Positions 1 to 5,500 are shown, counted from the first letter of the stretch. The stretch is DNA of 64,000 bases from Klebsormidium nitens (GCA_000708835.1 DF237249.1:1-64000), one strand, 5' to 3'. The notes: generated from the sequence alone by a model not told the origin. Numbers and translations: made by a program.

Positions 1-346
1 ATACATCGTGACAGAAGAAAGTCGACTGTGCATTGCAATCCAGATCATCCATCCGTTTGAAATTGCGAATGGTCAAACGGCGGCCGCCCCGGGTCGCGGC
101 TCCATCGGACAGACCATGGCATGCTTACAAAGTGTTATAACAAGGATATGATATCGTAGCTGCGCTGACTGGTTCACATGCAATGCGGTCTGCATAAATG
201 CAGTACACATAGCAATAGGTCGGAAGGAATCTGATGAGCAAATTTGGGTGACCCGGTGAGAAGACTCAGATTAGCGTGCTTTAGTGACTGTGCTTATAAA
301 AGTTCCTAGAAACGATGGAAACGACGATCGTCCGTGAATTCCTCCA

Positions 347-543
347 CTACCAGAACATCTTGGTTATTCGACCAAACAACCCCTCCCCAGCTGCTTTTTC
401 TGCTGACTCCTTTCGTTCCAGCTTGGCTCTCGCCTTTTCTGACAAATCGTCAGGATGCAAATCGCCAACATAATATTGTTCTAGCATTTTGATCGCACTC
501 TTACTGTGCCCCACATCGTCAAAGTCCTGGCTCGCATCTTGCG
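347..543 (-). CDS. Second (alternative) terminal exon of cytochrome b5, no transmembrane tail
   Basis: Acceptor ctcttgcag, phase 1 like the 601-875 exon. Encodes AQDASQDFDDVGHSKSAIKMLEQYYVGDL...GLFGRITKMFW*, a paralogous second half of the b5 domain. Confidence 0.8.
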
Positions 544-600
544 CTGCAAGAGTGGACGCAAAAAAGTGAGTCCATCTTGCAGCGCAAGACACGGCGTTTC

Positions 601-2051
601 TTAATCAACCTTGACTGGTTCCTTGGCTGTTAAAAACCGGACCGCAATGGCGAGCCCTAGGATAGCTAGCGGAACGAGAATCTGCAAAATCCGTCGGAAC
701 AAACTGGTTTCCTCCCCCGACTTTGCTGCGGCTCGTGTGGCAGCTGCCGCTCGAGCTGCTACCACCTTTGCTGGGAGACTGCTCATGTCAAACTCTCCGA
801 TGTAGTAACTCTTTAGCATGTCCCGGGCACTGTCGCTGTGGCCAACATCCTCAAAGTCTTCTGAGGCATCCTTGGCTGCACAGAGTAGTATCCCCAAACA
901 TCAAAATCAGAGACTTTGTAAACTTTCAAAGTCTGAAGGTTTCTCAATGGGAAGCAGCCGTCTTGACAAAAGGAAGACTCGACATAAGATCCATAACACA
1001 TCGTGACTCGCCATAGCAGAAAGAAGAAGCAGAACATACTGCATACAGCGCTTGCTTTGAGACCCCCACAAAAGCTCTTCTATTATTCTGAACATTAACA
1101 AGCCCCAAATTGACGCCCCATCCTGAAGGGACTTGCATGGGGCTTCAACGTCCTCATGATGACGATTACGAGAAAGAGATCGAAAGTTAGTTCCTTTTGA
1201 GTCCTAGGCTGAACAGATGCACCCAGCAGCCCGTAGAACTCCATGAAATGCTGTTGATTTAAACCCCAAAATGTTCCCTGGGAGCTGTTGGCATGAGACA
1301 GGCTACACCAAGACAGAGCACCGAGCCTACTGCTGATTGCAGACACCAGCGAACCATCAGAAGAAGTGGCAGAGCGTTCCTTCACCTGTTGATGTCAATA
1401 GAACCTCGTCACCTCCCGGGTGTTCCTCTAAGAACTTGGTGACATCGTAAACCTGAAAGGGGAAGATTGTGAGTGAGCGCCGTACCGAAACCTGGGGCAA
1501 CAAGACGAGGACCCTCTGCAGCTTGGACGACCTTGACAAAGAACCAGAAACATTTTGATGACTAGTATCTGGACAACAGAGATGATCGATGCATGAGAAG
1601 CAGTCAGCGGATATGAGGGCTGAGACGCATCTACGAAGGTTTCTGAACCTGCCCGCTTAACACACTCTATCCAAGCTTTCCAAGTGGGCGCCAAACCCTA
1701 GATCCAAGCTCACACTTGATATCATGCTTCCTCATCATCAATTTTGGCTGGCACCCATTGATGCCATTGATTTCCAAGGCCTCAAGCAGACACTTCGAGT
1801 CTTGCTTTCCAACTTCTTGTCAACACCCCATCAAAGCATTCAGTGGCAGCGCCGCTCTGAGATACGAATCAACCAGAAGACGGAAAGGTAAACTAGTGGC
1901 TTGCAGTTGCTTCAAGCAATCAGCATCACTCAGGGCCCCCATCTCTTCTGCTGACCTTGCCATGAATAACAAGCCAGGCGTCCTTCTCTGTGGTGTGCTT
2001 TGACGCTTCCTCAAGCGTTATAACTCGTCCCTCCGTCCCCTCTGCAACCAT
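601..2051 (-). CDS. CB5: Cytochrome b5, tail-anchored isoform (exons 1956-2051, 1386-1452, 601-875)
   Basis: Spliced translation MVAEGTEGRVITLEEASKHTTEKDAWLVIHGK|VYDVTKFLEEHPGGDEVLLTST|AKDASEDFEDVGHSDSARDML... contains the HPGG and GHS heme-ligand motifs. C-terminal hydrophobic tail ILQILVPLAILGLAIAVRFL. Splice sites are GT-AG and phases are consistent. Confidence 0.95.
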
Positions 2052-2596
2052 CGTGACCAGATCCTTGCACAAGCACGCTGTGAGCTCAAAGGTCGTTAGA
2101 AGGCGCCTCAAACAATGTCTAGTTCTCAAAAGATTTGTCAGCGTTCACGTCTTTCCAGGTTCCCCTTGTGCAGAACAGGCTTTGTCACTGTGATTCTGAA
2201 TGTCTGAACTTGAAGCTCAGATCTGAACCCTGGGTGTTAAAAACTGCAAATTTCTGACTGCAGTGGCCGGGGCACTTCAAGCCCGGGTAGTGCCAAGCCT
2301 AGATTTCTCTAAATTAGATGCCCGGAAACTGGACACTCAAAAGGTTTAGGCGTCTGTTCACATATTTCCAAATGACAAGAAGTGCTGCGTTCTGCCAGGT
2401 CAAAATGCACACTGAATTTGCAGCTGGCTCCAGACGCAGCTCGCCACGACGCCAGCATTCAATGGCAAGACGCTTTTGCTGCCAGTGCATCGCTAATTCC
2501 TGCCGGTGACAAAGGGCGCCTAAATGCAGTCCTGTGAACGAAAAGCTTGGTCTAAGGTTGCAGCTTGCAGGGCTAGATCAGGCGCTCGCACGAGCG

Positions 2597-5500
2597 ATGG
2601 CTTTGTGTTACCGAACCAGCAACGCCTTTGCACAAAACTTCCAGTCAAATAGATTCAGCGCCAAAGCTGCTGTTGCCAGCACTCTTGGTTGCTGTGAGGG
2701 AGCTCCCGCCTTGTTGAGTGAATCAAAATGGGCTTGCCTGAGAGCAGGACACTGTGGCAAACTTCCTTGTTGTGTTGACCATCGAAAAGTGGAAAACAGG
2801 AATTGGGGTTGTGCGCTAAATCTTGGCAAAGAAAGGCTGCGATTACGGTGGCGGTTGCAAGACGCAAGGTGCCGTTTGCCAACAACTAAAACTGCAAGAG
2901 ACATGCGCGCTGAGCGGAAAGAAAGCACCTCTTGCTTTTTGGACACGGGGCCCGCCGTAGCCCCTTGTTCTGCGAGGCTTGTTGTTAGAAAGCGGAAGTC
3001 TGACCTGAAGAGAATAGCTGCGTCGGCTGCGGTTCAAGCGGGGTGGAACGTTTTCCTGCCTCAGCAGTACACTTACAGCACTGACCTGAAGGATGTTGAC
3101 CCCCAGCAGGTAAGAAAGGAGTGGTTCCATGTGCAGATAACGCAGTGTTTAGTTTGATGGTGGTTCCTAACGTAGGCCCCGGTTTCCATATTATCATTCC
3201 ACAAATTGCAAGTATGCTAGGCCCACATTGATCAGATAAAAATCATTTTCCCTCAGCATGCACTGTACTGGCCTCTATTGGACATGTATCTTCCCCCAGC
3301 CACAAGTTGCACAAAAGAGAAGCCCTTCCCAACCAATATGTTTTCGTCCATGGCAGCTTAGTGACCTCTGGGAACGTACTCTAGGAGAGAAGCGGAGTCC
3401 CCACAGGTGCGCGCTAGCAATGAGGAAAAGTTTTGCGGTGAGTCCTGTAGTAAGCATCAGTCCCAGATTTTTCTTTCAAATTGAGCACGTATCTTTATTC
3501 CCATTTGGCGCCGGCGTGCCTACAGGCTGGCAATTGATACATTTTTTGCAGTCAAATGGTGCAGTCGCATGCACAAATACGAAATGGACAACGATCAAAG
3601 TTGGCAACTTGGCACAGACTTCTCCGCCTTCGTACTTGCTCTCCTTGGACCTGTGCAGGGGACTCAGTTCAGGGACATCTCGTTGTAGAGTCTGCTTTCT
3701 GAAAAGGTCGTTCGCCTTGCTTCTACAGAATGTGATTCATGGGGGCTTCTTTGAGATGCTTTAAGTTCCCTGCAGTTTGTTCTAGTCATTGTCAAGGAGC
3801 ATCATACAGAGACTTCGAACTGGCGGCCATCGCTCGTTAATCCAGGCACACGAATAGTTGGTGAGGTCTTCTGTCATCTGTGACGGCATCAAACTGGGCC
3901 TGATTGCCCTTGCTGTGATGTACTCTCACATAGCCACAATTGGTCAGTGTTGCTGTTGTTGCGGATGTTGGACAAAATTACTTGAGCACGTAATGTGAGC
4001 TGCTTCAACTAAAACGGCTTTGGTTTACACTACCCGTATCCAAGTCTAAACGTAGTGTGTTGTATTTCGTGTTGCAGGGGTAGCGCGAGCAATATCCGAT
4101 GGGGAGTTTATGGTACGTTCTCTACAGCCAATTTGCGCGGGGCTGTGTTGTTTGATTTGCATGGCCCCCTTCTCTTCCTTCTTCTCGTGTTTGGAAAACG
4201 GGCCGTTTGGGTGTTGCAGGTCGCCAGTGGGATCTGTCTGGCTTTGATTTGCGCACGGGTTTACAAGGGCTTCTCGCTGTTGAGAAAGCAGAAAAATTGT
4301 TTCGGAATCCAATTGCGACCGTTGCCTTTGGGCTGTCATTGTCTAGCTCAGCTGGATTCTTCGTCAGCCAGGGTCAGGTCAGAGGTTACCCGATTATCAA
4401 GATGGTTAACGAGCCGTTTTCTTGATACATGCGCTGAGCTCGAACCGCCGTAGGCACATTGCTTAGGCCTTTCACGAGGAAGAATTGACGCTGGTTCTCG
4501 TTTGGTCCCAACCTTGAGCATCTATTAGCCAAAAAAGACGCATGTAGCACCTGTTCGTTGATCCCCTGCAGACGACTTTTTCACGACTTTATCGTTGATC
4601 CCCTGCAGACGACTTTTTCACGACTTTATCGGCAGAGCCTCCATCACAATTGGAACAAAGATCATCTTGACCGACCTCCGATTGGTTCCTGAAGCGCCTG
4701 TCAACCATAGCAATCTTTGGCACTGCTTTATATGTTGAGCCCCTTCACAAGAATTCCTTCATTGGCTTCCGACGTTGATCCTTCTCTAACCCGTCGCGTT
4801 TTGTTTCAATGTCCCAGGCGACCGTATGTGACGTGGCCGTAGACCCGGACTATACTGGACGGGGCATTGGACGCAAGGTGGTCCAGACGCTGGTCCGCAA
4901 CATGAAGCTGCGGGGTCCCACCGGCTTTGCCGCCTTTCCTCCACCCAAGGCACGGCGCTTCTTCTTTATGTTAGGCTTTAGGTAAGGGCTGCAATCGCTG
5001 GAAGTATTGTGATGACGGGAGAGGCATGGCGGTCGCCAGAAGCTCTCTTGCTTAGTCGGATAAAGCTGTGCAGCCTTTCTCCAATCAGTGACTGTCAGAC
5101 TCTTTGAGTCACACGCTAAATCGTCTTTTGAAGGAGGGGATGTTGCAATCCTGGGAAGAACGCTGGAGTTGTGAGAGGAGAGCTCGCAATGTATTGCCAC
5201 AGAAACCCGCTTCAAACCCTGGGCGATCAGCTCTCTTTGGATGCAAGTATGCTCTTTAGTCTTCCACGAGAACGCCCTTTGCGGAATACAAGTCGAAGGA
5301 CCTCGTTTCAAATGACCTGCAGCCTGGCAAAACTTAAACTGTGGTCTCAACAGACTCGAGAGCTTCTCCCGTCTTGTAGTGCGTGCTTTGATCAGTTTTT
5401 GCATTGATAAATGCCTGCCTTTGTGTACAGGATCGATAAGAAGTACCGGCTCATGTCATATGAGGGCAAGGGCGAGTTCCCGGACTTGCGGGACGAACAG

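What the first reader, a model, noticed from the sequence alone, without database searches (positions are those of the whole stretch)
347..875. Cytochrome b5 with duplicated terminal exons: membrane-anchored versus soluble isoform from one gene
Seen: two tandem exons (601-875 and 347-543) each encode the second half of the b5 fold, including the second heme ligand (GHS). Both have a good cag acceptor and the same phase 1. One ends in a hydrophobic tail anchor; the other ends GLFGRITKMFW* with no transmembrane segment. They differ at many positions, yet both keep an open frame and the heme motif, which implies selection. Established: vertebrates make soluble and microsomal b5 by alternative splicing, while land-plant b5 proteins are typically tail-anchored. 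Inference: this lineage independently evolved a localisation switch by exon duplication.
Basis: partly seen in the sequence, partly recalled or inferred. Interest (0 to 1): 0.75.

Follow-up and report, generated by a model that had tools for sequence, protein, structure and literature searches.

The report
One b5 gene, anchored and anchorless forms
A cytochrome b5 gene of the alga Klebsormidium nitens carries two diverged tandem copies of its last coding exon, and RNA data show both are spliced in, giving a membrane-anchored form and an anchorless, probably soluble one; a conserved RNA hairpin covers the second splice site.

Summary

**Gene structure.** On the minus strand, exon 1 (2051-1956) and exon 2 (1452-1386) can join either 3a (875-601) or 3b (543-347).
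- 3a gives a 145-aa protein with a C-terminal transmembrane tail.
- 3b gives a 119-aa protein with no hydrophobic segment.

**RNA evidence.**
- Contigs of public runs carry the joint 1386->875 in four runs.
- They carry 1386->543 in two runs from two studies, at roughly a third of the junction depth.
- No joint leaves about 350.
- All contigs end at 248-290, so isoform A mRNA carries 3b in its 3'UTR.
- A K. subtile Trinity ORF is exactly isoform B.

**Conservation.** Two further Klebsormidium-like lineages keep both exons. dN/dS is 0.07-0.14 for 3b and 0.01-0.12 for 3a. The 3b stop is in the same column in all of them, and similarity collapses just after it.

**New here.**
- A hairpin of -46 kcal/mol (595-531) encloses the 3b acceptor. 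Its non-coding arm is invariant.
- The public model GAQ86607.1 (176 aa) fuses 3a to 3b. No contig supports that joint.

Localisation and the hairpin's effect on splicing are inferred, not tested.

The parts
1956..2051 (-). Exon 1, coding part (ATG at 2051; 32 codons). It holds the start of the b5 domain. RNA contigs reach up to about 2139-2142, which is 5'UTR.
   Evidence: joint 1954/1956 to 1450/1452 in all four runs
1386..1452 (-). Exon 2 (67 nt). It encodes VYDVTKFLEEHPGGDEVLLTST with the first heme ligand (HPGG). It ends in phase 1, and its donor is G|gtgaag.
601..875 (-). Exon 3a. It encodes the second half of the b5 fold (DVGHS), an Ala-rich linker, a transmembrane tail and the stop TAA (603-601). 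The product is isoform A, 145 aa, tail-anchored.
   Evidence: Joint 875/1386 in X19, X20, X9 and X17. dN/dS 0.01-0.12.
544..600 (-). 57-nt spacer between the 3a stop and the 3b acceptor. It is 3'UTR in isoform A and intron in isoform B. It holds the 5' arm and the loop of the hairpin.
531..595 (-). Conserved RNA hairpin. The perfect 15-bp core has arms at 589-575 and 551-537, and pairing extends to about 26 bp. The 3b acceptor AG (545-544) and the first 13 nt of exon 3b lie in the 3' arm; the pyrimidine tract lies in the loop.
   Evidence: dG -46 kcal/mol, z -7.8; relatives z -5.5 to -6.4; control at the 3a acceptor z -1.5; I2; core arm 15 of 15 invariant
347..543 (-). Exon 3b. It encodes an alternative second half of the b5 fold (DVGHS), a charged helical linker, the conserved end FGRI(T/S)KM(F/L)W and the stop TAG (349-347). 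The product is isoform B, 119 aa, without a transmembrane segment.
   Evidence: Joint 543/1386 in X19 and X9. dN/dS 0.07-0.14. Stop in the same column in all relatives.
248..346 (-). 3'UTR shared by both isoforms. RNA contigs end at 290, 280, 259 and 248. A small conserved block, AAGCACGC, lies at 281-274.

Best explanation
The window is from Klebsormidium nitens. Its b5 gene KFL_003000010 has a tandemly duplicated, anciently diverged terminal coding exon.

The donor of exon 2 (1386) is spliced to either of two acceptors:
- The proximal acceptor (875) gives a 145-aa plant-type tail-anchored b5. Its mRNA carries the second copy as untranslated 3'UTR.
- The distal acceptor (543) removes 3a as part of an 842-nt intron and gives a 119-aa b5. 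In this protein the whole second half of the heme domain is replaced by the paralogous version, and the membrane anchor is replaced by a charged helix and a short conserved C-terminal motif. It is most likely a cytosolic (soluble or peripheral) b5.

Both forms share one 3' end.

Shown here: both joints, the shared 3' end, purifying selection on both exons, and conservation of the layout in at least three Klebsormidium-like lineages.

Inferred: the localisation of isoform B, and the origin by exon duplication.

A very stable conserved hairpin, whose 3' arm contains the 3b acceptor AG, most likely tunes how often that acceptor is used. This step is also inferred.
For: **Gene structure and products.**

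**Joints in RNA contigs.**
- 875/1386 is present in four runs.
- 543/1386 is present in X19 (depth 48.7 against 99.7) and in X9 (32 against 56.9). These come from two studies.
- Both joints have CT..AC ends on the plus strand, which is GT..AG on the gene strand.
- No other joint was seen, and contigs end at 248-290.

**Independent assemblies.**
- P0002, a K. subtile Trinity complete ORF of 119 aa, equals exon 1 + 2 + 3b.
- L003, a spliced contig from a JGI sample of a relative about 81% identical in DNA, is exon 1 + 2 + 3a running on through 3b.

**Selection.**
- dN/dS of 3b is 0.07-0.14, including its tail (0.08-0.13).
- There are no indels, the stop is in the same column, and invariance falls to 11% just after it.

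**Fold.**
- P0002 matches human b5 type B (3ner) at E 6e-30 over residues 12-89.
- The AlphaFold model has pLDDT 83-91 over residues 9-90, and Foldseek gives TM 0.83-0.90 to b5 structures.

**Hydropathy.**

**Hairpin.**
Against: - The B joint is carried by short junction unitigs of 56 nt, with 27 and 29 nt on the two sides. That is below the tool's 31-nt bridging rule, although it is the length expected of a k=31 branch between two shared nodes.
- The B joint was not seen in X17 or X20. Contigs drop minor variants, so this does not show absence.
- The runs are only guessed to be RNA, although the spliced contigs themselves show it.
- No protein-level or localisation evidence exists.
- Contig depth is a poor measure of isoform ratio.
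- The hairpin shows no compensatory (both-sides) change, because its core is invariant. Its structure is therefore supported by conservation and energy, not by covariation.
- At -46 kcal/mol the hairpin should be almost always folded, yet the acceptor is used. The direction of its effect is unknown.
Confidence: 0.85

Rival explanations
1. Exon 3b is a decaying relic of a duplication that merely sits in the 3'UTR, and the 1386->543 joint is splicing noise without a functional product.
For: - Isoform A mRNA does carry 3b as UTR.
- The B joint is missing from two of the four runs laid.
- The TM-coding part of 3b is cut short by a stop.
Against: - Orthologue dN/dS is 0.07-0.14 with dS of 0.3-1.5. 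There are no indels and the stop column is identical in three lineages.
- Junction depth is about one third of the total in two studies.
- The B form is the ORF kept for this gene in the K. subtile transcriptome.
- Similarity collapses right after the 3b stop, as it does at the end of a coding region.
Confidence: 0.05
2. The public gene model GAQ86607.1 (176 aa) is the true product. It uses a donor inside 3a (ACCA|GTTTGT, last exon base 704) joined to 543, giving a b5 with an extra half-domain and no anchor.
For: The model is deposited for K. nitens, and its residues are identical to the window.
Against: - No 704->543 joint appears in any of the four runs, while both other joints are present.
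- The product would carry one and a half b5 domains.
- The spliced contig of the relative (L003) and the K. subtile ORF show the 145-aa and 119-aa forms instead.
Confidence: 0.03
3. Isoform B is not free in the cytosol. Its conserved C-terminal motif FGRI(T/S)KM(F/L)W, a remnant of the start of the anchor, binds membranes peripherally or docks on a specific partner. The switch would then be between integral and peripheral or partner-bound b5.
For: - F56, G57, R58, I59, K61, M62 and W64 are invariant among lineages, while the linker before them varies.
- dN/dS of the tail is 0.08-0.13.
- The motif aligns with SLFRRILQILV at the start of the 3a anchor.
Against: - Ten residues with two basic side chains cannot span a bilayer.
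- AlphaFold leaves residues 107-117 disordered.
- No known targeting motif was recognised.
Confidence: 0.25
4. The conserved inverted repeat at 595-531 acts at the DNA level or in the mature mRNA (protein-binding palindromes, mRNA stability or localisation of isoform A), and not on splice-site choice.
For: - Each arm is itself a near-palindrome (6 bp plus a triloop), and the two arms are also direct repeats (D3).
- The stem begins 6 nt after the 3a stop, so it is present in every isoform A mRNA.
- The stem is too stable to melt physiologically.
Against: - The acceptor AG lies in the middle of the 3' arm.
- Synonymous sites of the first codons of 3b inside the stem are invariant (3 of 3), against 46% outside it.
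- Structures that conceal splice or branch sites are a known way to control alternative splicing (PMC11162794, PMC8824230).
Confidence: 0.3

Closest known systems
Vertebrate CYB5A: microsomal (tail-anchored) and erythrocyte (soluble) cytochrome b5 from one gene by alternative splicing
   Same: One b5 gene gives an anchored and an anchorless protein by alternative splicing near the 3' end of the coding region.
   Different: - In vertebrates a small extra exon brings in a stop, and the heme domain is identical in both forms.
- Here a duplicated exon replaces the whole second half of the heme domain (61% identity) as well as the tail.
- The lineage is a streptophyte alga, so the origin is independent.
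Chloroplast ascorbate peroxidase APXII of spinach and tobacco: stromal and thylakoid-bound isoforms by alternative splicing of the 3'-terminal region (PMC9434269)
   Same: In the green lineage, a 3'-terminal splice choice decides whether a heme enzyme carries a C-terminal membrane anchor.
   Different: A different protein. No duplicated homologous exon is involved, and the catalytic domain is unchanged.
Tandem duplicated exon substitution / mutually exclusive exons (PMC9741552, PMC9013439, PMC6071210)
   Same: - Adjacent homologous exons of the same phase.
- Only one is translated per mRNA.
- Both are under purifying selection, and the duplication is old.
- A conserved RNA structure lies between the copies.
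   Different: - The duplicated exon is the terminal one.
- The choice is between two acceptors, and the mRNA of the first form still contains the second copy as UTR.
- No competing docking/selector pairing was found: the arm-to-3a-acceptor duplex at -20 kcal/mol is within background.
Pre-mRNA secondary structures that conceal splice or branch sites (PMC11162794; tomato HsfA2, PMC8824230)
   Same: A conserved local stem holds the 3' splice site of the alternative exon. The loop holds the pyrimidine tract and a possible branch site.
   Different: An effect on splicing is not tested here, no covariation is available, and the stem is much more stable than a thermosensor would need.
USP19 ER-anchored and cytoplasmic variants by alternative last exon (PMC9842591)
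   Same: A tail anchor is present or absent depending on the splice choice.
   Different: An animal deubiquitinase, with no exon homology between the alternatives.

Membership tests
Cytochrome b5 (Pfam PF00173) | First axial His in the HPGG motif | tested here: met
   EEHPGGDEV lies in exon 2 and is shared by both isoforms. H43, P44, G45 and G46 are invariant in a 28-sequence alignment.
Cytochrome b5 (Pfam PF00173) | Second axial His in the VGHS motif, in each alternative exon | tested here: met
   DVGHS is present in 3a and in 3b. H67 and S68 are invariant. Pfam matches positions 45-73 of the profile for both exons.
Cytochrome b5 (Pfam PF00173) | Significant whole-domain sequence match for isoform B | tested here: met
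   The K. subtile orthologue P0002 matches human b5 type B (3ner) at E 6.1e-30 over residues 12-89. PF00173 is precomputed for P0002. The half-domain of 3b alone scores 22.4 bits, just under the 23.7 cut-off.
Cytochrome b5 (Pfam PF00173) | b5 fold | tested here: met
   The AlphaFold2 model of P0002 has pLDDT 83-91 over residues 9-90. Foldseek against the PDB gives target TM 0.83-0.90 and rmsd 1.7-1.9 A to b5 structures.
Cytochrome b5 (Pfam PF00173) | Binds heme and transfers electrons | not testable with these tools
   Needs recombinant protein and spectroscopy.
Tail-anchored membrane protein | Single hydrophobic segment at the extreme C-terminus, with no N-terminal signal | tested here: met
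   Isoform A: 19-residue Kyte-Doolittle mean of 2.30 at residues 120-138 of 145. Isoform B: maximum 0.07, so not met for B, which is the point of the switch.
Alternative splicing of tandem duplicated exons | Adjacent homologous exons of equal phase, each with its own acceptor | tested here: met
   57 nt apart, both phase 1, core 61% identical.
Alternative splicing of tandem duplicated exons | Both joints present in RNA | tested here: met
   (875/1386 in 4 runs, 543/1386 in 2 runs), plus the Trinity ORF P0002 and the spliced contig L003.
Alternative splicing of tandem duplicated exons | Strict mutual exclusion of the two exons in mature mRNA | tested here: not met
   Isoform A mRNA contains 3b as 3'UTR. 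Exclusion holds for the translated sequence only.
Alternative splicing of tandem duplicated exons | Both copies under purifying selection | tested here: met
   dN/dS is 0.01-0.12 for 3a and 0.07-0.14 for 3b.
Structure-masked splice site | Stable stem that contains the splice site, conserved in relatives | tested here: met
   The non-coding arm core is 15 of 15 invariant, against 51% at third codon positions (P about 4e-5).
Structure-masked splice site | Compensatory base changes | tested here: inconclusive
   0 of 28 pairs have a both-sides change. One G-U to A-U change was seen, and the core never varies.
Structure-masked splice site | Opening or closing the stem changes acceptor use | not testable with these tools
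   Needs mutagenesis or structure probing.

The most novel reading that the evidence does not exclude
The invariant hairpin over the 3b acceptor is a regulated switch, opened by a helicase or RNA-binding protein or dependent on transcription speed or condition. It would let Klebsormidium partition one b5 gene's output between the ER membrane (desaturases, P450s) and the cytosol (soluble reductase chains) in response to stress such as cold or desiccation. The soluble form's swapped heme-pocket half would be tuned to different partners. The apparent difference between runs (B joint at about one third of depth in two runs, absent from the contigs of two others) would then reflect regulation.
Probability: 0.2. 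Interest if true: 0.75.

Novelty: new variant of a known kind. Interest (0 to 1): 0.6.

Why it matters
- It is an independent, mechanistically different case of the anchored/soluble b5 switch known from vertebrates. It occurs in a streptophyte alga close to the land-plant ancestor, whereas plant b5 proteins are described as tail-anchored.
- The alternative exon swaps half of the heme domain as well as the anchor. The two forms may therefore differ in redox properties or partners, which is directly testable.
- It is a clean, conserved example of tandem-exon alternative splicing outside animals, with a candidate RNA-structure control element.
- It corrects a public gene model that fuses the two alternatives.

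Tried and rejected
- **Onward splicing from TG|gtagtg near 350 to a TM exon.** There is no joint, contigs end at 248-290, and no hydrophobic ORF lies in 346-1.
- **Readthrough of the 3a stop into 3b.** The frames differ, and the spacer has indels that are not multiples of three in relatives.
- **Competing 'selector' pairing of the hairpin's 5' arm with the 3a acceptor.** The duplex is -20.1 kcal/mol, against a background of -22 to -25 elsewhere in the pre-mRNA and -45.3 for 3b.
- **The arm as a repeated element.** It has no other copy in the window.
- **Rfam over 1-3000.** No match.
- **Metagenome scan with the 3b alignment.** It returned only two unrelated intronless b5-like genes, L007 and L008.
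- **Exhaustive HMMER with 3b against 1.84 billion representatives.** Only one full-length cluster (P0003) was found. The rest match the b5 core only, or are tandem-domain b5 proteins.
- **A 54% relative (L010).** It has a single GHS exon and no second copy in the 370 nt available downstream.
- **Earlier notes of this scan.** Nothing at this place.
- **Literature.** No paper on Klebsormidium b5 isoforms was found.
- **Paralogue dS between 3a and 3b.** It could not be estimated because sites are saturated, so the duplication cannot be dated beyond 'older than the sampled lineages'.

Full report
**What is in the sequence**

The minus strand of 2051-347 holds a small cytochrome b5 gene.
- Exon 1 is 2051-1956 (32 codons from the ATG).
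- Exon 2 is 1452-1386 (67 nt). It carries the HPGG heme-ligand motif and ends in phase 1 at a G|gtgaag donor.
- Two candidate terminal exons follow: 3a (875-601) and 3b (543-347). Each sits behind a pyrimidine-rich ...gcag acceptor, is 2 mod 3 in length and ends in a stop.

Joined to exons 1 and 2, 3a gives 145 aa and 3b gives 119 aa. Both encode the DVGHS second ligand. Each half-domain alone matches Pfam Cyt-b5 positions 45-73 (E 4.7e-5 and 1.2e-4).

Isoform A has a C-terminal hydrophobic segment (Kyte-Doolittle mean 2.30 over residues 120-138). Isoform B has none (maximum 0.07) and ends GLFGRITKMFW, which aligns with the start of the 3a anchor, SLFRRILQILV.

The two copies are 61% identical in protein over the 28-codon core, and synonymous sites are saturated.

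**Which organism**

A word search with 3b found three protein clusters only. Cluster look-up names two of the proteins:
- P0002 is EukProt Klebsormidium subtile, a Trinity 'complete' ORF.
- P0128 is GAQ86607.1, 'hypothetical protein KFL_003000010 [Klebsormidium nitens]'. It lies in the 90%-identity cluster of P0001, a Logan ORF.

P0128 is residue-for-residue the window's exons, so the window is K. nitens. Earlier notes of this scan on other pieces of the genome name the same organism.

**Are both exons used**

Contigs of four public runs were laid on 1-2600. Their exon-only coverage and spliced contigs show that they are RNA.
- The joint 875/1386 is present in all four runs: X19, X20, X9 and X17.
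- The joint 543/1386 is present in X19 (depth 48.7 against 99.7 for the A joint) and in X9 (32 against 56.9). These are two different studies.
- Both joints have GT..AG ends on the gene strand.
- The only other joint seen is the exon 1-exon 2 joint. There is none near 350 and none from inside 3a.

The contigs that cover 3b run on past its stop and end at 290, 280, 259 and 248. The graph in X19 shows one shared 3' node (280-546, depth 184) that branches into the A path (517-875) and the B junction unitig.

Two caveats apply. The B junction unitigs are 56 nt long, with 27 and 29 nt on the two sides. That is what a k=31 branch between two shared nodes should look like, but it is under the tool's 31-nt rule of thumb. 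Contig depth is also only a rough guide to isoform share.

Independent support comes from two other assemblies:
- P0002 of K. subtile is exactly exon 1 + 2 + 3b and ends ...KMFW.
- L003, a 978-nt contig from a JGI sample of a relative about 81% identical in DNA, is exon 1 + 2 + 3a spliced, and runs on through the spacer and 3b.

So the two forms share one 3' end, and isoform A mRNA carries 3b in its 3'UTR. The event is a choice between two acceptors, not between two poly(A) sites.

**Is 3b maintained by selection**

Genomic contigs of a closer relative (L004, about 87% identical) and a more distant one (L001, L002, L005, L006, L009, about 81%) all have the same layout. In the alignment:
- Neither exon has an indel.
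- Both stops are in the same columns.
- Introns are barely alignable.
- Invariance drops from about 90% at first and second codon positions to 11% immediately after the 3b stop.

NG86 dN/dS between lineages is 0.01-0.12 for 3a and 0.07-0.14 for 3b. The non-b5 tail of 3b is at 0.08-0.13. The last ten residues of 3b are among its most conserved. A relic in a UTR would not behave like this.

**Is isoform B a sound b5**

- P0002 matches human type B b5 (3ner) at E 6e-30 over residues 12-89, which is the whole heme domain including the 3b half.
- An AlphaFold2 model has pLDDT 83-91 over residues 9-90, a helix at 90-106 and a disordered end.
- Foldseek gives target TM-scores of 0.83-0.90 to solved b5 structures.

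Heme binding and localisation themselves are not tested.

**How far the arrangement reaches**

An exhaustive HMMER search with 3b against 1.84 billion cluster representatives found one full-length cluster, P0003. Everything else matched only the common b5 core, or was a tandem-domain b5 protein. A 54% relative (L010) has a single exon and no second copy in the 370 nt available downstream. A metagenome scan added nothing relevant. The data fit an origin within, or at the base of, the Klebsormidium lineage. Sampling of other streptophyte algae is thin.

The 57-nt spacer and the start of 3b form a hairpin at 595-531. Its perfect 15-bp core has arms at 589-575 and 551-537 (I2), and pairing extends to about 26 bp.
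- The energy is -46 kcal/mol, with z -7.8 against shuffles.
- The 3b acceptor AG (545-544) lies in the middle of the 3' arm. The pyrimidine tract is in the loop.
- The same fold is predicted in L004, L001 and L005 (z -5.5 to -6.4). The equivalent stretch at the 3a acceptor gives z -1.5.
- The non-coding 5' arm core is 15 of 15 invariant across lineages in which third codon positions are 51% invariant (P about 4e-5). The synonymous sites of the first 3b codons inside the stem do not vary.
- No pair shows a both-sides change, so the case rests on conservation and energy.
- The arm has no other copy in the window and no Rfam match.
- It does not pair with the 3a acceptor better than with random sites in the pre-mRNA.

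My reading is that the stem modulates use of the distal acceptor, as described for structures that conceal splice or branch sites (PMC11162794, PMC8824230). The direction of the effect is open. The stem is too stable to melt, and the acceptor is nevertheless used. A role in the mature isoform A mRNA, or at the DNA level, is a live rival.

**The public annotation**

GAQ86607.1 (176 aa) joins 3a at ...SGEET (donor ACCA|GTTTGT, last base 704) to 3b at 543. This gives one and a half b5 domains and no anchor. None of the four runs has that joint. The two supported products are the 145-aa and 119-aa forms.

**Comparison with what is known, and verdict**

- Anchored and soluble b5 from one gene is known in vertebrates (my own knowledge). 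There the heme domain is unchanged.
- 3'-terminal splicing that adds or removes a membrane anchor is known in plants for chloroplast APX (PMC9434269) and in animals for USP19 (PMC9842591).
- Alternative use of tandem duplicated exons is well described, mostly in animals (PMC9741552, PMC9013439, PMC6071210).
- I found no paper on b5 isoforms in Klebsormidium.

This is a new variant of a known kind. It is a convergent b5 localisation switch, built by duplication of the terminal exon, in which half of the heme domain is swapped together with the anchor, with a conserved hairpin at the alternative acceptor.

Noticed in passing
window 347-2051 (-): The public K. nitens protein GAQ86607.1 / KFL_003000010 (176 aa) is a fusion of exon 3a (up to ...SGEET, donor at 704) with exon 3b. 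No RNA contig in four runs has that joint. The supported products are 145 aa and 119 aa.
   Followed up: yes
window 575-589 and 537-551: Each hairpin arm is itself a near-palindrome (TCTTGC-NNN-GCAAGA). The RNA could therefore also form two 6-bp mini-hairpins instead of the long stem. The two arms are also 82% direct repeats (CATCTTGC...GCAAGA on the plus strand).
   Followed up: partly
window 274-281 (-): A small block, AAGCACGC, is conserved in all relatives about 65-70 nt after the 3b stop, in otherwise unalignable 3'UTR. It lies close to where the RNA contigs end (248-290). It may be part of the cleavage/polyadenylation signal.
   Followed up: no
window 2421-2600: Contigs of X17 and X9 cover 2421-2600 and run over the end of the laid stretch. 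This is a separate transcribed unit upstream of the b5 gene, with a coverage gap between about 2176 and 2349. It was not examined.
   Followed up: no
L007:930-1043 and L008:1465-1602: Two metagenome contigs encode intronless b5-like proteins that share the exact stretch GHSKSAIKMLE with exon 3b but are otherwise unrelated (NNKKYDITEFLNEHPGG...). This is probably chance convergence within the b5 core.
   Followed up: partly
window 350-460 (-), exon 3b linker: The 3b linker begins GDLHPDD, as in animal b5 (human type B: GDIHPSD). The 3a linker, GEFDMSSLPAK, resembles land-plant b5. The two copies thus resemble different b5 subtypes. The stretch is too short for a reliable tree.
   Followed up: no
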